Sequence record: MW812343.1
Length of the DNA stretch: 64,000 bases
Direction: 5' to 3' (one strand)
The notes under the pieces are model-generated. The model was not told where the DNA came from. It was given only the letters and a program-made list of their open reading frames with translations, and made no database searches. How positions within the stretch are numbered: the stretch's first letter is position 1; the number at the start of each line of letters is the position of its first letter. Of the stretch, positions 1,206 through 23,074 are shown in pieces. The position numbers were made by a program, and so were the translations under genes.

Positions 1206-1961
1206 ATGACCGAAGTCACCCCAACCAAACGCACACCGAACATCTTCGATGCGCCTGATATCCGTCTTCCTAACATCATCATTGGTGTGGATGCTGAAAC
1301 CAAATCAACCCGTGCAGACGCCTATGTCGTGGCCGTGGGTGCCGCCGCTTACGACGTAGCAACCATGCGCATGATTGCCTGCCATTATCAGACCATCGAT
1401 CCGAATGATGAGAAGGCGAAGGCCCTCTTCCATGAAGACCCTTACACGATGGCGTGGTGGCGTGGCGAAGGGGACAACCCAGACTATGCCCCATCGCGTG
1501 AAGCGTTTACTGAGGCGTTCTCAGGCACGATGAAAATGCCCGAAGCGCTCTGGGGTCTGCATAACTTCCTTGAGAAGTTCAAAACGCACAAGGTCGCCCT
1601 GTCTATGCGCGGGCCAGAGTTTGACCAGCCGATTCTGATGAACGCTTATGCGCAGTGTGATGTTCCGCAGGGCTTATTGAAGCGCTTCTCCATGCTGGAC
1701 TCTGACCGAACTGCCGAGCGTATTATGCACGCCTTTAACCTGACGCCAGATTACCGTGCGGAATCGCACAACTGGACACGCGGCAAAGATGCGTTCTTAC
1801 ACCACGCAGGTTTTGACTCGGCGCGGGAAGGTTACATTACTGCCCGTATTTACCACTTAGCAATGATTGCTCGTCTGCATGGTTTTGACCGTATGCTGGA
1901 AGCGCACAATCAGATGATGACCGGTGAGTACACGGCTGTGGATTATTTGAGAGAGGAATAA
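1206..1961 (+). CDS. DEDDh 3'-5' exonuclease/exoribonuclease (Rv2179c-like)
   Basis: ExoI IIGVDAET, ExoII RGPEFDQPIL, ExoIII HHAGFDS; RBS GGAGAG before ATG 1206. Confidence 0.75.
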   Translation: MTEVTPTKRTPNIFDAPDIRLPNIIIGVDAETKSTRADAYVVAVGAAAYDVATMRMIACHYQTIDPNDEKAKALFHEDPYTMAWWRGEGDNPDYAPSREAFTEAFSGTMKMPEALWGLHNFLEKFKTHKVALSMRGPEFDQPILMNAYAQCDVPQGLLKRFSMLDSDRTAERIMHAFNLTPDYRAESHNWTRGKDAFLHHAGFDSAREGYITARIYHLAMIARLHGFDRMLEAHNQMMTGEYTAVDYLREE

Positions 1962-3481
1962 TGGACGTTAAAGAGTATGATCATGTCGTCGTCTATACGG
2001 ACGGTAGTCGTGTCGGCCCCCCGGTAGGTACGGGGGGTGGTATTCACGGATACGCTTTCAACACCGGGGTGTTAAATGAGAACACACCTTACAGCTTACC
2101 GGACGTAGAGGAGTCTGTCACGACCAACGGGTACAAAAAGTTCCCGAAGGACATTAAGAAACCCACCGTACCCGAGACTGTCGATTTCTTCGACTGTGTA
2201 ATTCCTGTTCAGGCGGAATATTGGTCGGATGTGGCGGAATTGATGGCATTCATCAGTCTCTTTGAAAACTCCCCCATTCTCGCCAAGAACTATACCGTTT
2301 ACATCGATGCGTCTTACGTGGTTAATGCGTGGAACGAATGGATGGACGGTTGGCGTAAGCGTGGCTGGACGAAAGCAGACGGGACACCGATTGCTAACGT
2401 CAATCTTATCAAGAAGATGGATGAGATTAAAGCCCGCCTGCGTCAGGAAGGTCGTTCTATCCGTGTGATTAAAATCAAAGGTCACGCTGGGTTCTACGGC
2501 AACGAGCGTGCAGACACCATGGCGCGTAAAGCATCTGCGATGGTGGCGGCATCTCAAGGGGTGGAGTACCGTCCGTATTGGAGCGTCTCCGGTGAGTTAC
2601 CGTCCGAACCCGAATCGGAAGTCTTGGGTGGTGACGGGGGCTTACTGAATATGCCGAAGGTAACTAACACGAAGTTCTGTTATCCGTTGGTGAACGAAGA
2701 ACACCCGACCATGACCATTAACGGCGAAAGCTGGAAATATATGTTCGGTGGCAACCACGCAAAGAACAAGGAAGATATTGTGTTTATCGGGAAGATGATT
2801 CCTGATGCACAATTCGCCGTGTTCCTCAGCAAAGAGGGTTGGGACAACGTTTATCAGTTGATCAACAAACACAATGAGTTGGCATGGGACAGCGTACCGT
2901 TGATGAAACGGTACGATCCGATAGCGATTGTGTATAACGCCATGATTAAGCGTAAGAAGTTCCAAGATGCGGCGAAAGAAGGGTTGCCGGTCAATCTCAT
3001 GAAGTTCAGTGAGGATGGCAACCTGTGGATGTACGAAGACCTCGCGATTACGCGTGTCGTGCGTCCTGCACTGCTTTCTTACCGCGCGTTAGAAATCCGT
3101 GATGAGTTAGCGGCCTTCTTGCGTGACGGCGTTGAAGGTCGTGCCAGTGTGGTGTTGAACGACATCACCGATTTGCTGTTCGATGAGAAAGGGAAGCCGG
3201 TTAAGACGTTCTACCGTAACGTTGACGTCAGCTTTAACGTGAAAGTTAATTACCCTGAATCCGACAAGCAGATTCCTATCATCCTGACCCGTAATATCGA
3301 CATGCCGGATCGTACCGACATGAACCGTATCATGGAACCGGGGGGTAAGTGGTACGTGGCCTGTCGTCGTCCTCAGAAGCGTTGTGTGGAGTTTGCGGTG
3401 GTTTACGTGGGCAAAGAGTACCATGGTCTTTGGTGCGGCTACTACGCGAACAAACGCATCCTGAGAGAAGAGGAGTTGTAA
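1961..3481 (+). CDS. RNase HI-domain protein with long C-terminal extension (phiKZ gp155-like)
   Basis: VYTDGS, AELMA, YIDASYV, WRKRGW, KIKGHAGFYGNERADTMARKA are RNase HI motifs; ~300 aa extra C-terminal region. Confidence 0.85.
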   Translation: MDVKEYDHVVVYTDGSRVGPPVGTGGGIHGYAFNTGVLNENTPYSLPDVEESVTTNGYKKFPKDIKKPTVPETVDFFDCVIPVQAEYWSDVAELMAFISLFENSPILAKNYTVYIDASYVVNAWNEWMDGWRKRGWTKADGTPIANVNLIKKMDEIKARLRQEGRSIRVIKIKGHAGFYGNERADTMARKASAMVAASQGVEYRPYWSVSGELPSEPESEVLGGDGGLLNMPKVTNTKFCYPLVNEEHPTMTINGESWKYMFGGNHAKNKEDIVFIGKMIPDAQFAVFLSKEGWDNVYQLINKHNELAWDSVPLMKRYDPIAIVYNAMIKRKKFQDAAKEGLPVNLMKFSEDGNLWMYEDLAITRVVRPALLSYRALEIRDELAAFLRDGVEGRASVVLNDITDLLFDEKGKPVKTFYRNVDVSFNVKVNYPESDKQIPIILTRNIDMPDRTDMNRIMEPGGKWYVACRRPQKRCVEFAVVYVGKEYHGLWCGYYANKRILREEEL

Positions 3482-17497: not shown

Positions 17498-17926
17498 ATG
17501 AATACACTGGCATTTGAATCGGGTAAAGGGTTGAGCGTTAACGGACATCTGGTTCCGGACACCAATAACCACCATTTTGAAAAACTGTACCGTCGCATCG
17601 GCGTCGGTCGTAAGGTTAACATCAAAGTCACTAATGAGATTGCCCTAAATGGCAACGTAGAAGCACTGGGGCCGATGTTCGGCTTCCGTCCTAGTCAGGA
17701 TGCGGCAGCAGCGCTACTGCGCCACGGAGAGTGTTCTAGCGGCGTGTACGCGTTTCGTTTACTCGGTTCGCTTCGTCGTATCTCCGATAAGCACTTCGGG
17801 CAGGGCATGACACCGTCGGTGTTGAACACCGGTGAAATCATTATCCTTATTTACTCCAACCACGAACACGCATCGGGTTTGGATTTCATGATTAGCTACT
17901 CAGAAGTGGAGAGCGCAGATGTCTGA
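17498..17926 (+). CDS. Hypothetical protein
   Basis: 142-aa ORF overlapping next gene. Confidence 0.7.
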   Translation: MNTLAFESGKGLSVNGHLVPDTNNHHFEKLYRRIGVGRKVNIKVTNEIALNGNVEALGPMFGFRPSQDAAAALLRHGECSSGVYAFRLLGSLRRISDKHFGQGMTPSVLNTGEIIILIYSNHEHASGLDFMISYSEVESADV

Positions 17927-18782
17927 TGTACAATACCCGGTGTTAAAGAACTTTGAACGTGTCGTGGAATGGAATACCAATTCTGACATTTATCGCCACG
18001 GCAACGTACACCAACAATCACTGAAGATGTACCGCCATCTTGGTGAACTGTGTGAAGGTGTGCAAAAAATGAAACAGCTGGATGTCGCGGCTGCAATGGG
18101 TAAGTTTGCCGTTGCACTGGTTGGTGTGGCGTCTTTTGCTGGCGTCGATCCTGATGAGCTGAGCGAGCTGTACAGCTACAGTGGAAGAAAAGCAACACCA
18201 TGTACACCTTCAGAAGCGGCGTGTAATCTGGTGCGTTCTACGACCTCTATGGTTAACGATATCAACCAGTGGCTGTCACCTGCCGGTACACAGATGGCGA
18301 GAGCCATTGCCACATCTTCCATTTGCGAAGTTTTCTGTCTGTTGAAGCAGAACGCTTCAATCAATGCGGTTGTTTTAGACCGCACCATTGAGAACGCCAC
18401 TAATGCCCTTTGTGCGAAAAGGGGCAAGATGGATGAATTTGGCATTTTCCATCCCGAAGAAGCTAAGTTTGTGGGCCGGTCTTCCGGAGAGTGGGCTTAC
18501 CTTGCCATTAGCAAAGGGCTGGAATCACGCTTTGCTGAACTCAATGCGCGCTTTCAGTACGAAAGCCTAACTGGCGACCTCACCGAAGTTATCGGCCAGG
18601 AAATGAATAACAAACTCAACGAATTGTTGGAAAAACATGTTCGAATGAAGACCGAGTTAAAGCATCATCTCACTGGTCTCAATCCATCTGTTGAGGTGAC
18701 TCGAAATGCCGGTGTGGTCAATATCGTAATGAACAGCGATCTGTACCAATTACTTGCTGTATTAGGAAAGGTAAAAGACTGA
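17919..18782 (+). CDS. Degenerate MazG-like (NTP-PPase) protein with C-terminal extension
   Basis: RVVEW...[16 protein letters not shown]...[10 protein letters not shown] and [14 protein letters not shown] parallel the 22241 protein but lack its acidic metal ligands. Confidence 0.5.
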
Positions 18783-19837
18783 TGAAACAGTATTTAGAGT
18801 TAATCCATACGGTGTTGAATGAAGGTCATGAGAAGGCTGACCGTACCGGAACTGGCACCATCTCTATCTTCGGCCACCAGATGCGTTTTGACCTGCGCAA
18901 AGGTTTCCCGCTGGTCACAACGAAGAAAGTGCATCTGCGCTCGATTATCCACGAACTGCTGTGGTTCCTCCAAGGCGATACCAACATCCAATATCTGAAA
19001 GACAACAATGTCAGTATCTGGGATGAGTGGGCGGATGAAAACGGCGACCTTGGCCCGGTCTATGGTAAACAGTGGCGTGAGTGGAACGCGGACAAAATGG
19101 TGTCGATTGACGACATTAACCTTCGCCAGCATCTGGAAGATGAAGGGTACGTTGAGCGCGACATGATGTGTGTCGAGGGCGAACACTATTTCCTGTACAC
19201 CAAAGTCATTGACCAGATTCAAACGGTTATCGACCAACTGCGTAACGACCCCGACAGCCGCCGCATTATCGTCAGTGCATGGAACGTGGGGGAGCTTGAC
19301 CAGATGGCTTTAGCCCCTTGTCATTCCTTCTTCCAGTTCTACACGCGGGCGCTCAATTATAAAGAGCGTCTGCAATGGGTGAAAGACAATTGCTCAGAGG
19401 CGTTGGACGCATGGCATGAAACGACGAACGAACAGATTGCCATGAAAGATATCGATCACGACGAAGCCAGTCAGCAACTGGTAGAGTGGGTTGAGGATAT
19501 CGCACCGGAGCGCATTTTGTCTTGTCAGCTGTATCAGCGCAGTGCAGACGTCTTCCTCGGTGTACCGTTCAACATCGCTTCCTACGCGTTACTGGTTCAC
19601 ATGGTGGCACAGCAGGTCGGTATGGCTGTGGGAGATTTCATCTGGACGGGTGGTGATACCCATCTGTACACCAATCATCTGGAACAGGCCACATTGCAAC
19701 TCTCTCGCGTACCGCATGACTTGCCGAAACTTGTCATCAACCGCACACCGGCCTCTATCTTCGACTACAAGTTTGAAGATTTCGAAATCGTGGGGTATGA
19801 ATCACATCCAGCGATTAAGGCCCCAGTCGCCATTTAA
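18782..19837 (+). CDS. thyA: Thymidylate synthase ThyA with two in-frame insertions
   Basis: [56 protein letters not shown]. Confidence 0.97.
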
Positions 19838-19846
19838 GGAGGCTGT

Positions 19847-20341
19847 ATGGGAGACAACGTTCTGAAGTTTCCCGGTAACCCTAACCCGCCTATCGTTCAA
19901 CCCCGTCGTGACGTAGCACACTTCCCATTGCCTCAACGGGATGGGAAGGTGAACGCGTTTACAGTACCTGTCTCTGATATGTATTGGTGGGTAGCGATTT
20001 ACGAAAAGGTTGCCGAGCATAACCCGTATTTCGAAAACCTGTTTTACTTTTATTCCGAACCTTACGGTTGGCAGAATCAGTCGTACGCTAAACGACGCAC
20101 ATCCTGCGAACTGACTATCGATCGGGCGTCGATGTTGGAGTTACTGAAAGTGGTGTCGTATACCCACATCATGTCTCTCGACAGTCACCTGAACGATGAA
20201 GATTACGAACTCGTGCACGATAACGCCATGATGGTGTTAGGTGACGATTTGGAAATCGATTACTCAATGGGGATATTCATGTCCCCAACCACAGACCCTA
20301 ACCGGTTTATACTCAACTTTGTGGAATGCCATAATGACTGA
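19847..20341 (+). CDS. Hypothetical protein
   Basis: 164-aa ORF, RBS AAGGAGG. Confidence 0.75.
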   Translation: MGDNVLKFPGNPNPPIVQPRRDVAHFPLPQRDGKVNAFTVPVSDMYWWVAIYEKVAEHNPYFENLFYFYSEPYGWQNQSYAKRRTSCELTIDRASMLELLKVVSYTHIMSLDSHLNDEDYELVHDNAMMVLGDDLEIDYSMGIFMSPTTDPNRFILNFVECHND

Positions 20342-21209
20342 CAAGCAAAATACCCTGTACTTCTTCTCTGACCGTTTCTACACCATGCCTGGCGACAACT
20401 ACAGCTTTGGTATCGTCGCAGCGAAAGACACCGCCGAAGCCAAACTGATGCTGGGTACTGAAATGGTCGACGGTCTGCCGGTGGGCAAGACGGATGCAAC
20501 GGGTCAGATTCTGTGTGCGGAAACCATTCGCAATATCGACCCGCGTACCGACACCGTAACTAAAAAGGTTACCGCTGAGCTGTGGAAGCTGAACGACGGG
20601 GTAGACGTTACTGCCCGTGTTCAATACCTGCGCGACACCATTTCGAAAATGCAGGGTATCGATTGTAGCAATCTGGAAGTTGACTTCACACGCTGCCTGC
20701 GTATTCCAGGTGGTTGCACCAGCACCGGTAAAGATCTGTGGCGTGTCATGGTGAAGCACCCAGACTTCCCGAACACCGTACCGATCATGCTGTCCGCAGA
20801 AGGTGACGGTTCTATCACCGGCGACGACGATGTGAACTTCACGCGTCTCGGTGAAACCGAAGAATACAGCTACAACGAAAGCGTTGACCGTGTATTAACG
20901 CCTGAGTGGCTGATGCTGGACTTGCTGGAACAACATGGCCTGACCCCAGAAGACTGGTACGTTATCGCCGGTACGGCGCGTGCAGCAGCGTATAGCGCCA
21001 CTCCTGTTGATGGTTGGGAAGAAGTGGACGAAGTGTACGGGCAGAACGAAAGCGCGCACGTCATTCGCTTCTGGCTGAACCCAGACTGGCAGAACCTGAT
21101 TGTGGCTGCGGTGGCAAAAGTGGTTGAATCCATGCCGAAAGAACCGCTGCCAGAAAACCTCGCTGAAGAACTGGCGGGATCTGAATCTGCGGACGAAGCC
21201 GCAGAGTAA
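20334..21209 (+). CDS. Hypothetical acidic protein
   Basis: ATG 20334 overlaps upstream stop; strong preferred-codon usage. Confidence 0.7.
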   Translation: MTDKQNTLYFFSDRFYTMPGDNYSFGIVAAKDTAEAKLMLGTEMVDGLPVGKTDATGQILCAETIRNIDPRTDTVTKKVTAELWKLNDGVDVTARVQYLRDTISKMQGIDCSNLEVDFTRCLRIPGGCTSTGKDLWRVMVKHPDFPNTVPIMLSAEGDGSITGDDDVNFTRLGETEEYSYNESVDRVLTPEWLMLDLLEQHGLTPEDWYVIAGTARAAAYSATPVDGWEEVDEVYGQNESAHVIRFWLNPDWQNLIVAAVAKVVESMPKEPLPENLAEELAGSESADEAAE

Positions 21210-21692: not shown

Positions 21693-22022
21693 ATGCGTCA
21701 AATTGAAAACTTTGGGCGCGGTGAACCCACGCCTGCGCCGTGGGACGGTGAGGGACTTCCACCAGTTAACGAAATGGTGATGGTTTCAGCCAACCAAGGT
21801 TACACATGGTTCCCAATTTGCTTATTGTGGATTGGCGAGAAATCTTTTGTCTGGCGTAATATGCAGAGTGTGGCTCATGATGGGAATGAAATCTTCCACC
21901 AAGCCCACTACTCATGTTGGCTGTATCGTCCGTTCGTGGACGGTATGGAACGCCGTTCGTATCACCGTATTGAGGAAACAGACGATGTCTGGAAAAGATT
22001 TAAGTTCACATCTGAAGCCTGA
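21693..22022 (+). CDS. Hypothetical Trp-rich protein
   Basis: RBS GAGG before ATG 21693. Confidence 0.65.
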   Translation: MRQIENFGRGEPTPAPWDGEGLPPVNEMVMVSANQGYTWFPICLLWIGEKSFVWRNMQSVAHDGNEIFHQAHYSCWLYRPFVDGMERRSYHRIEETDDVWKRFKFTSEA

Positions 22023-22185
22023 GGGCGCACTGTCAGAAACCATCGCAGAACATAACCGTCAGGTTGATGAGATGGATTTGTTTAACGGTGACGTGCCGGG
22101 CGTTGGCGATGATGTGTTTGTCGAAGGCGGCGCTGATGTAGGTGCCGAAGACGACAACTGTGCAGGTGGTGCCTGCAAAATTTAA
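21985..22185 (+). CDS. 66-aa acidic peptide ending in NrdA-like redox tail (DDNCAGGACKI)
   Basis: RBS GAGGA at 21972-21976, ATG 21985, followed by terminator; C-terminus matches class Ia RNR alpha tail (E. coli DDGCESGACKI). Confidence 0.6.
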   Translation: MSGKDLSSHLKPEGALSETIAEHNRQVDEMDLFNGDVPGVGDDVFVEGGADVGAEDDNCAGGACKI

Positions 22186-22192
22186 CAAGAGC

Positions 22193-22225
22193 GGGTGTCC
22201 TTATGGACACCCCTATTTCATTTTT
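22193..22225 (+). terminator. Rho-independent terminator
   Basis: GGGTGTCC-TTAT-GGACACCC then CTATTTCATTTTT. Confidence 0.65.
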
Positions 22226-22240
22226 TAAGGACTATCAGAA

Positions 22241-23074
22241 ATGTCACAAGTTTTCGAATTACCGATTGAGCACAAGTCTATCATTCTGAACGGTGCGATT
22301 CTGGACTTCGTTCTACCTCAGTTGGCAGTCATCGGTAAACGTATGTCACGTATCACGCGTCTGGCACTCAGCACCGAGTCTCCGATGACGCTGGTTAACG
22401 GCTATACGTTTGAAGGTGAACCGGCAGAATTCCACGCGCCGTTGCGTTACCACACCAATCTCGAATTCCACAAAGAACCGGTCTTCCACAACCGTATCGT
22501 TCCATTGTACCGTGTGTCTCAGTGTGTGGCGAAAGTTATCGGCTGGTCGACTGACCGTGGTATTCTGGAGAACGGTCGTTGGGACTCTCAGGGTACCAAA
22601 CTGTATGAAGAAGACGGTGAAGCAGCGACCGGTGTCGGTAAAAACAAAAAGCGTCTGATCATCGACGGTATCGGTGATGCGTTGGTTGTGCTGGTTAACG
22701 TGTTGGAACTGACGAGCATCGACTCTGCGGAAATCACCCACATCTACCAGCTGGTGCGCGACACCAAAACTGTAGTGGATAACCCACACTACCATTTCCA
22801 CAAAATGCGTAAGAACCTGACCGAAGTGGTGGATGTGGTTTACGAATGCGAAGCCATCGATTCACCGAAGAAAGTTGCCCTCGGTCTGTTAACCCATGAC
22901 GAACGTCAGCAGATGCTGGGTCATGCACAGCAGGCGATTCATCACGCCAACCAACTGGCCCGCCACTACGAATACTCGTTGGACGAGTGTTTCTCTCTGG
23001 CGTGGGATGAAATCAAAGACCGTAAAGGTTTCCTGAACGCTGACGGTGTGTTCATTAAAGAAACCGACGCTTAA
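22241..23074 (+). CDS. MazG-like nucleotide pyrophosphohydrolase
   Basis: KVIGWSTDRGI...QGTKLYEEDGEA...IIDGIGDALVVL and WDEIKDRKG...DGVFIKE. Confidence 0.75.
   Translation: MSQVFELPIEHKSIILNGAILDFVLPQLAVIGKRMSRITRLALSTESPMTLVNGYTFEGEPAEFHAPLRYHTNLEFHKEPVFHNRIVPLYRVSQCVAKVIGWSTDRGILENGRWDSQGTKLYEEDGEAATGVGKNKKRLIIDGIGDALVVLVNVLELTSIDSAEITHIYQLVRDTKTVVDNPHYHFHKMRKNLTEVVDVVYECEAIDSPKKVALGLLTHDERQQMLGHAQQAIHHANQLARHYEYSLDECFSLAWDEIKDRKGFLNADGVFIKETDA

What the first reader, a model, noticed from the sequence alone, without database searches (positions are those of the whole stretch)
21985..22185. Free-standing ribonucleotide-reductase redox tail peptide
A 66-aa acidic ORF with its own RBS and terminator ends in AEDDNCAGGACKI, closely matching the class Ia NrdA C-terminal Cys pair (E. 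coli DDGCESGACKI). That pair shuttles electrons from thioredoxin/glutaredoxin to the active site. No nrdA body lies upstream. The peptide could act in trans as an electron shuttle, a decoy for host Trx/Grx, or a re-reductant for a tail-less phage RNR elsewhere. It sits among dNTP-metabolism genes.
Basis: partly seen in the sequence, partly recalled or inferred. Interest (0 to 1): 0.65.

Follow-up and report, generated by a model that had tools for sequence, protein, structure and literature searches.

The report
Free-standing ribonucleotide reductase tail peptide
A giant Erwinia phage with no ribonucleotide reductase of its own encodes a 66-residue acidic peptide whose end copies the electron-shuttling tail of the host enzyme. 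It belongs to a large unnamed family found in reductase-less phages and in Neisseria and Moraxella, so it is probably a way to act on the cell's DNA-precursor supply.

Summary
The window is Erwinia jumbo phage pEa_SNUABM_6. ORF 21985-22185 is an annotated 66-aa hypothetical gene with a GAGGA ribosome-binding site and a terminator hairpin. Its last 11 residues match the E. coli NrdA C-terminus at 8 of 11 positions.

It is not an isolated case. A profile search found 54 significant relatives, nearly all 40-120 aa acidic proteins that end in the same Cys-x4-Cys-Lys-Ile/Leu tail. A profile-profile comparison with true NrdA tails gave E 1.4e-10. PHROGs holds the family as phrog_14561, function unknown.

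Members occur in at least seven phage lineages and in about half of the sampled Neisseriaceae, plus Moraxella.

None of 41 viral records carrying a free or fused tail, nor this phage or Parshik, has an NrdA body. One group of ~60-kb phages (portal and terminase identified) carries an orphan NrdB plus the peptide. On two contigs, a deoxynucleotidase carrying this tail sits directly upstream of an NrdA that has lost its own Cys-pair tail.

Best reading (about 0.5): a tail acting in trans that feeds reducing equivalents to host NrdA. An inhibitor or decoy role is not excluded. No experiment or complex prediction could be run. I found no prior description.

The parts
21972..21976 (+). Shine-Dalgarno-like GAGGA, 8 nt upstream of the ATG
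   Evidence: Read directly from the sequence.
21985..22185 (+). 66-aa acidic peptide gene (pEaSNUABM6_00249), a free-standing homologue of the NrdA C-terminal tail and a member of phrog_14561
   Evidence: PHROG match E 6.7e-17. The Atlas model has mean pLDDT 0.33, so the peptide is predicted disordered.
21985..22059 (+). Variable N-terminal ~25 codons, not shared with Parshik, Huxley or Machina. The first 38 nt overlap the end of the upstream ORF 00248.
   Evidence: DNA alignment A4; annotations.
22120..22137 (+). VEGGAD motif (V46-D51), the family hallmark just upstream of the tail
   Evidence: Invariant in alignment A1 and nearly invariant in A2.
22144..22182 (+). NrdA-like redox tail AEDDNCAGGACKI, with Cys59 at 22159-22161 and Cys64 at 22174-22176
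   Evidence: Both Cys, one Gly and the Lys are invariant in all 28 aligned members.
22193..22226 (+). Intrinsic-terminator-like hairpin (22193-22212) plus a T-rich run. It is invariant at the DNA level across the Machinavirus relatives.
22241..23074 (+). Downstream neighbour: MazG-like nucleotide pyrophosphohydrolase
   Evidence: phrog_7855, E 1.6e-115; weak Pfam MazG match.
20334..21209 (+). phrog_10453 protein of unknown function (00246). In a related 237-kb phage its homologue is fused directly to the tail peptide.
   Evidence: The fold was not identified.
18782..19837 (+). Thymidylate synthase, part of the nucleotide-metabolism context
   Evidence: PF00303, E 2.9e-119.

Best explanation
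The ORF is a real, conserved gene for an intrinsically disordered, strongly acidic peptide. Its last ~13-20 residues are homologous to the flexible C-terminal redox tail of class Ia ribonucleotide reductase alpha (NrdA). In NrdA that tail's Cys pair carries electrons from thioredoxin or glutaredoxin to the active-site disulfide after each turnover (established knowledge). The phage has no RNR and no redoxin, so the peptide must work on the host system. Most likely it is reduced by host Trx/Grx and re-reduces the active site of host NrdA in trans. That would add shuttle capacity and raise dNDP output for a 240-kb genome. Shown here: the homology, the family, its distribution, the absence of an RNR in carriers, and one natural tail-less NrdA beside a tail-bearing protein. 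Inferred: binding to NrdA and Trx/Grx, the direction of the effect (boost), and expression.
For: 1. Tail homology is significant: hhalign E 1.4e-10, and 11 of 11 identity between some family members and bona fide NrdA tails.
2. Both Cys are invariant in 28 of 28 aligned members, and the motif is always at the extreme C-terminus, including in fusions. A full thiol-disulfide cycle would need this.
3. On L095/L096, a 5'-deoxynucleotidase carrying the family's tail lies directly upstream of nrdA-nrdB. That NrdA ends ...NTRDGSGDQL with no Cys pair, and only 46 nt separate it from nrdB. The cis tail appears to have become dispensable where a trans tail exists.
4. None of 41 viral records with a free or fused tail (28 of them at least 90% complete), nor either of 2 GenBank genomes, has PF02867. 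The positive control found it in 4 of 4 records.
5. Six of seven ~60-kb phages of one group (portal and terminase identified) carry an intact host-like orphan NrdB plus the peptide but no NrdA. These phages plainly want host NrdA active.
6. Other fusion partners and the neighbours are nucleotide-metabolism enzymes: a MazG-like pyrophosphohydrolase, ThyA and DHFR.
7. The last residue co-varies with the resident NrdA: Leu in Moraxella, Ile in Neisseriaceae.
8. Selection acts at the protein level: 122 small-ORF instances are encoded by 67 different 27-nt tail sequences.
Against: Host NrdA has its own tail, which sits at a very high local concentration, so a free peptide would need high abundance or a docking site to add much. 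Neisseriaceae and Moraxella keep a tailed NrdA alongside the peptide, so the peptide is not simply a replacement part. The tail-less NrdA case is one lineage seen in two samples, and a metagenome scan found no second example. The absence of RNR in carriers covers only about 7-10 independent lineages, and only 18.7% of phage genomes have an RNR at all (PMC3653736), so this is suggestive rather than statistically strong. The conserved VEGGxD motif and the acidic N-terminal motif have no explained role.
Confidence: 0.5

Rival explanations
1. Competitive inhibitor or decoy. The peptide occupies the place on NrdA where the enzyme's own tail works, or it soaks up reduced thioredoxin or glutaredoxin. 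Either would lower host RNR activity or redirect host redox power, in the way yeast Sml1 interferes with the R1 C-terminal domain.
For: It is a tail mimic by sequence. It co-exists with fully tailed NrdA in bacteria, which suits a regulator. It is disordered and acidic like known small RNR inhibitors (own knowledge). The Sml1 precedent is the paper listed as reference b16 in PMC4078304; that paper could not be read here.
Against: Phages without an RNR depend on host RNR for most of their dNTPs (inference). The ~60-kb phages add an intact NrdB alongside the peptide, which makes little sense if the peptide blocks NrdA. The tail-less NrdA beside a tail-bearing protein needs a productive tail, not an inhibitory one. 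Both Cys are strictly kept.
Confidence: 0.2
2. Docking module. The tail is mainly an address tag that tethers phage nucleotide-metabolism proteins to host NrdA or to Trx/Grx, building a dNTP-synthesising complex. In this reading the free peptide binds a phage partner through its N-terminal half.
For: The tail is found fused to a deoxynucleotidase, to a MazG-like pyrophosphohydrolase, and to the phrog_10453 protein, whose gene lies two genes upstream in this window. The jumbo-phage members share their own conserved N-terminal motif, IPG-L/V-D.
Against: There is no evidence of binding. The fold of phrog_10453 is unknown. Many members are only ~42 aa, with little beyond the tail and one short acidic motif. 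This reading overlaps with the best explanation rather than excluding it.
Confidence: 0.15
3. A role unrelated to RNR. The Cys pair plus the acidic peptide binds iron or an Fe-S cluster, or acts on the ISC machinery. Alternatively, the peptide is a precursor of a modified peptide (RiPP).
For: In Neisseria and Eikenella the gene lies between iscS and iscU. One database protein joins an IscU N-terminus to the peptide (P0041). An Atlas feature hit at 0.84 points to a putative FxLD lanthipeptide cluster, which is a lead only.
Against: The tail matches NrdA tails specifically. There are fusions and neighbours in dNTP metabolism and next to nrdAB. No maturase genes lie nearby. Ser/Thr are not conserved in the supposed core. 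The bacterial context varies: aroE and an acyl-CoA dehydrogenase in Moraxella, pspC and tag elsewhere.
Confidence: 0.07
4. A decaying, functionless remnant of a deleted nrdA 3' end.
For: The last ~20 residues are most simply derived from an nrdA 3' end.
Against: The gene has its own start codon, ribosome-binding site and terminator. It is conserved across Machinavirus, Seoulvirus and other jumbo phages, which also lack nrdA. The family has its own conserved non-NrdA motif, VEGGxD. 67 different DNA versions encode the same tail. It is present in 59 of 121 sampled Neisseriaceae genomes.
Confidence: 0.03

Closest known systems
C-terminal redox tail of class Ia RNR alpha (E. coli NrdA residues ~737-761, Cys754/Cys759)
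   Same: The sequence pattern is shared: acidic run, Asp-Asp-x-Cys-x-x-Gly-Ala-Cys-Lys-Ile at the free C-terminus. Both are predicted disordered. The isolated 25-residue NrdA tail exists as PDB chain 1qfn_B. From my own knowledge, that entry is its mixed disulfide with glutaredoxin 1.
   Different: The peptide is not attached to any RNR catalytic body. It is encoded as its own gene, or is fused to other enzymes. It carries a family-specific VEGGxD motif and an acidic N-terminal segment in place of the NrdA ...YYxNTRDG... barrel end.
Yeast Sml1 and fission-yeast Spd1 (small disordered RNR regulators)
   Same: They are small, disordered proteins that act on the large RNR subunit. Sml1 interferes with the function of the R1 C-terminal tail, according to the title of reference b16 in PMC4078304 and my own knowledge.
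   Different: No sequence relationship was seen. Those proteins are inhibitors and are not copies of the tail. The direction of the effect here is unknown and is more likely positive.
Split or partial phage RNR gene sets (intron/intein-split nrdA; phages with only nrdB)
   Same: Phages often carry fragments or subsets of RNR genes. Two phages with nrdB alone were noted by Dwivedi et al. 2013 (PMC3653736). Split NrdA C-terminal fragments ending in the same tail were seen here (166-484 aa).
   Different: Those fragments still contain part of the catalytic barrel. Here only the last ~20 residues of NrdA are represented, and the genome has no other nrdA piece.
phrog_14561, phrog_38753 and phrog_24014 (PHROGs families of unknown function)
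   Same: The window peptide matches all three, at E 6.7e-17, 1.1e-7 and 3.3e-7.
   Different: PHROGs gives no function and no link to RNR. The link is made in this report.

Membership tests
Class Ia RNR alpha subunit (NrdA) | Catalytic ten-stranded barrel (Pfam PF02867) with the active-site cysteines | tested here: not met
   The peptide has no Pfam hit. PF02867 is absent from the whole phage genome.
Class Ia RNR alpha subunit (NrdA) | C-terminal Cys-x4-Cys pair in an acidic, flexible tail ending in Lys-Ile/Leu | tested here: met
   hhalign E 1.4e-10.
Class Ia RNR alpha subunit (NrdA) | The tail is reduced by Trx/Grx and re-reduces the active-site disulfide | not testable with these tools
   This needs biochemistry.
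Free-standing NrdA-tail peptide family (phrog_14561 and bacterial relatives; unnamed) | 40-120 aa, acidic, with VEGGxD followed by (D/E)D-x-C-x-G-G-A-C-K-(I/L) at the C-terminus | tested here: met
   Profile search E 8.8e-16 for the window peptide; PHROG E 6.7e-17; alignments A1 and A2.
Free-standing NrdA-tail peptide family (phrog_14561 and bacterial relatives; unnamed) | The carrier phage lacks an NrdA body | tested here: met
   Absent in all 41 viral records and both GenBank genomes; control positive in 4 of 4.
NrdB C-terminal tail mimic (alpha-binding peptide) | The N-terminal acidic motif resembles the NrdB C-terminal decapeptide beyond what composition alone gives | tested here: not met
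   For the window peptide, the PSSM score was reached by 1180 of 3000 composition-preserving shuffles. Most family members scored similarly.
Lanthipeptide / RiPP precursor | Adjacent maturase genes and conserved Ser/Thr plus Cys in the core peptide | tested here: not met
   No such neighbours were found. Ser/Thr are not conserved. The only support is an Atlas lead at 0.84.
Sml1/Spd1-type RNR inhibitors | Sequence homology to Sml1 or Spd1, and inhibition of R1 | not tested
   No homology surfaced in the Pfam, PDB or profile searches. Inhibition cannot be tested here.

The most novel reading that the evidence does not exclude
There is a widespread, unrecognised class of stand-alone RNR alpha-tail peptides. 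RNR-less phages, from 40-kb phages to 320-kb jumbo phages, would use them to plug into and drive the host's NrdA, sometimes together with an orphan NrdB. Neisseriaceae and Moraxella would use them as an extra soluble electron relay or regulator of their own RNR. In at least one phage lineage, the enzyme's own tail has been lost in favour of the trans copy.
Probability: 0.45. Interest if true: 0.85.

Novelty: new variant of a known kind. Interest (0 to 1): 0.74.

Why it matters
RNR is the only de novo route to DNA precursors. It is a drug target, and Neisseria gonorrhoeae RNR is one such target (own knowledge). Recent work also reports that phage-driven RNR activity is sensed by bacterial defence systems (bioRxiv 10.64898/2026.10.27.754916).

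A tail encoded as a separate ~45-aa gene would show that the last step of the RNR cycle, re-reduction, can be supplied in trans in nature. It would give a minimal way for a virus to tune a host enzyme that it does not encode. It would also reveal an unannotated RNR-linked small protein in human-associated Neisseria and Moraxella.

The idea is directly testable with a synthetic peptide and tail-mutant NrdA. Even if the peptide proves to be an inhibitor, it would be, to my knowledge, the first bacterial or phage counterpart of the eukaryotic small RNR regulators.

Tried and rejected
- Tail-less phage RNR elsewhere in the genome: rejected. There is no NrdA, NrdB or NrdD, and no Trx or Grx.
- Peptide as a replacement for a tail-less NrdA in bacteria: rejected. 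All five Neisseriaceae and Moraxella genomes checked have fully tailed NrdA.
- N-terminal acidic motif as a mimic of the NrdB C-terminal tail: not supported beyond composition.
- phmmer of the peptide against PDB sequences: only chance-level hits.
- Pfam and NCBIfam: no family.
- Fold of the fusion partner and neighbour phrog_10453: AlphaFold model with pLDDT 82. No Foldseek match at E 0.001 or better, and best VIA Z 4.8. The fold is unidentified.
- BLASTP between the MazG-like part of P0054 and the window's MazG-like gene: no similarity. They belong to different PHROGs.
- Relatives of the deoxynucleotidase-tail fusion in IMG/VR: none.
- Metagenome scan for more tail-less NrdA next to tails: none among 44 loci.
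- Literature: no paper holds the tail string, and none describes a free-standing tail. The Zhang et al. 2007 paper on the R1 C-terminus and Sml1 could not be read.
No verdict.
It was re-run from the files in /data.

Full report
**Identity of the window and the ORF.**
- Megablast places the window at 100% identity in Erwinia phage pEa_SNUABM_6 (MW812343.1, Machinavirus, 240,164 bp).
- ORF 21985-22185 (+) is the annotated CDS pEaSNUABM6_00249, a hypothetical protein.
- It codes 66 aa with pI 4.05, 15 acidic and 4 basic residues. GAGGA lies 8 nt before the ATG.
- An 8-bp, GC-rich hairpin at 22193-22212 followed by a T-rich run comes after the stop codon.
- The first 38 nt overlap the end of the upstream ORF 00248.
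- In Parshik, Huxley and Machina that upstream ORF is absent. Their peptide is 56 aa with a different N-terminus and the same final 13 residues.
- Across these ~83%-identical relatives, the last 13 codons, the terminator and the start region of the next gene are almost invariant even at the DNA level.

**Comparison with NrdA.**
- The E. coli K-12 NrdA C-terminus, read from NC_000913.3, ends ...IQDDGCESGACKI. The phage peptide ends ...AEDDNCAGGACKI. That is 8 of 11 identities, at the free C-terminus in both.
- A scan of bacterial genomes returned small ORFs and true NrdA ends side by side. NrdA of Brenneria, Gilliamella and Thalassotalea ends in DDGCEGGACKI (Marinobacterium and Psychrobacter in ...KL), the same residues as the small proteins of Neisseria and Moraxella.
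- A profile-profile comparison of 28 peptides with 10 NrdA C-termini gave probability 96.9% and E 1.4e-10 over the last 13 columns.
- The resemblance is homology or very tight mimicry, not chance.

**A large, unnamed family.**
- A word-indexed search found eight small relatives.
- An exhaustive profile search of 1.84 billion representatives found 54 proteins at E of 0.001 or better. Nearly all are 40-120 aa and carry the match at their C-terminus. None is of NrdA length.
- The consensus is an acidic segment, then VEGGxD, a few acidic residues, and Cys-x-Gly-Gly-Ala-Cys-Lys-Ile/Leu.
- Both Cys, one Gly and the Lys are invariant in 28 of 28 aligned members.
- Pfam and NCBIfam have no model. PHROGs has it as phrog_14561, phrog_38753 and phrog_24014, all of unknown function.
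- The ESM Atlas model of the window peptide has mean pLDDT 0.33, so the peptide is predicted disordered.
- Across all loci fetched, 122 small-ORF instances use 67 different 27-nt sequences for the tail, so conservation is at the protein level.

**Where the family occurs.**
- A degenerate DNA pattern for Cys-x-Gly-Gly-Ala-Cys-Lys-Ile-stop hit 89 stretches in IMG/VR.
  - About 50 are small free ORFs with at least six different acidic N-terminal types.
  - About 28 are true NrdA ends or split NrdA C-terminal fragments.
  - A few are fusions of 124-356 aa.
- In ~60-kb phages the peptide gene follows the portal gene, downstream of the large terminase.
- In bacteria it is a chromosomal small ORF in many Neisseria, Kingella, Eikenella, Bergeriella and Moraxella.
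  - It was found in 59 of 121 sampled genomes of the Neisseria family.
  - In N. polysaccharea and Eikenella it lies between iscS and iscU. In another Neisseria, nrdA lies about 3 kb downstream. In Moraxella it lies between aroE and an acyl-CoA dehydrogenase gene. Another contig has pspC and tag as neighbours.

**Relation to RNR genes.**
- The window phage and Parshik have no NrdA, NrdB, NrdD, thioredoxin or glutaredoxin.
- None of 41 IMG/VR records carrying a free or fused tail has PF02867, and 28 of those records are at least 90% complete. The same search found NrdA in 4 of 4 control records.
- Six of seven ~60-kb phages of that group encode an intact, host-like NrdB with a normal alpha-binding C-terminus, but no NrdA.
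- Dwivedi et al. noted only two phages with nrdB alone, and RNR genes in 18.7% of phage genomes (PMC3653736).
- Because the carriers fall into roughly 7-10 lineages, the absence of NrdA is suggestive rather than statistically decisive.
- The five Neisseriaceae and Moraxella genomes checked all have NrdA with an intact tail. The final residue matches between NrdA and peptide: Leu in Moraxella, Ile in Neisseriaceae.

**The most informative case.**
- P0057 is a 224-aa protein. Its N-terminal part matches the PHROG for 5'-3' deoxyribonucleotidase (E 3.4e-15), and its C-terminus is a family tail (phrog_14561, E 1e-8).
- On two contigs from different samples it lies next to DHFR and directly upstream of nrdA (1008 aa, with an intein) and nrdB.
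- That NrdA ends ...YYHNTRDGSGDQL with no Cys pair, and nrdB starts 46 nt later.
- It was the only tail-less NrdA among all loci examined.
- The simplest reading is that the trans tail serves this NrdA and the cis tail was lost.

**Other fusions.**
- One joins the tail to a nucleotide pyrophosphohydrolase (P0054; phrog_671, E 1.7e-30).
- Another, in a 237-kb relative, joins it to the homologue of window gene 20334-21209 (phrog_10453).
- That protein modelled well (pLDDT 82) but matched no known fold.

**Mechanism.**
- From established RNR biochemistry, the alpha tail's Cys pair re-reduces the active-site disulfide and is itself reduced by Trx or Grx. PDB chain 1qfn_B is the isolated 25-residue E. 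coli tail.
- I infer that the phage peptide is a substrate of host Trx/Grx and a reductant of host NrdA in trans, adding re-reduction capacity for a phage that must make about 240 kb of DNA per progeny without its own RNR.
- The orphan NrdB plus peptide combination and the tail-less NrdA case favour a productive role over an inhibitory one.
- A decoy or inhibitor, a tethering tag, or an Fe-S-related role remain possible.
- The idea that the acidic N-terminal motif copies the NrdB tail failed a shuffle test.
- No complex prediction or read-level expression check could be run.

**Novelty.**
- Full-text searches found no description of a free-standing RNR tail. Reviews of RNR extensions discuss only tails attached to the enzyme (PMC9669993).
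I did not test that. It suggests a wider habit of re-using host protein fragments.

Noticed in passing
L189 (G004:C1:38091-41963), ORF 1366-2478 (-); also G013, G020, G021, G023, G024: ~60-kb phages (portal and terminase identified) that carry the tail peptide after the portal gene also encode an intact, host-like class Ia NrdB with a normal C-terminal alpha-binding tail. They have no NrdA.
   Followed up: partly
L095:1215-6180 and L096:1130-6095: A phage-like nucleotide-metabolism cluster: DHFR, a deoxynucleotidase fused to the tail, an intein-containing NrdA that lacks the C-terminal Cys pair, and NrdB.
   Followed up: partly
L100:9137-10201 (IMGVR_UViG_3300011862_000001, 236,909 bp): In this jumbo phage, the homologue of window gene 20334-21209 (phrog_10453, unknown fold) is fused in frame to the tail peptide.
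   Followed up: partly
L022:4196-6527, L014:3709-6117, L023:3714-7335: In Neisseria and Eikenella the small peptide gene sits inside the isc cluster, between iscS and iscU. One Neisseria also has a Fic-domain gene inserted there, with hscB and nrdA downstream.
   Followed up: partly
L004:2776-3198 (Salmonella phage SPFM8, LR535906.1): The SPN3US-type peptide appears here in permuted pieces. An unannotated frame ends in the Cys-pair tail at 3039, and the next annotated ORF (3061-3198) holds the IPGLDP...VEGGVD part. This may be a rearrangement or an assembly artefact.
   Followed up: no
window 21693-22022 (+): ORF 00248 (109 aa, phrog_22315) is present in pEa_SNUABM_6 and _10 but absent from Parshik, Huxley and Machina. 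Its presence goes with a replaced N-terminus of the peptide and a 38-nt gene overlap.
   Followed up: partly
window 22144-22240 (+): The last 13 codons of the peptide, the terminator hairpin and the leader of the MazG-like gene are nearly invariant at the DNA level among relatives that are only ~83% identical overall. This may indicate an added RNA-level or regulatory constraint, or recent recombination.
   Followed up: no
window 17919-18782 and 22241-23074 (+): Two divergent MazG-like pyrophosphohydrolase genes bracket the thymidylate synthase and peptide cluster.
   Followed up: no
L206, L217, L218, L215, L208, L202, L203 (metagenome contigs): A further group of small ORFs has an N-terminal NENQ...DDFDDLDNLF segment and the same tail. 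It has no NrdA or NrdB within 8 kb, and its host was not identified.
   Followed up: no
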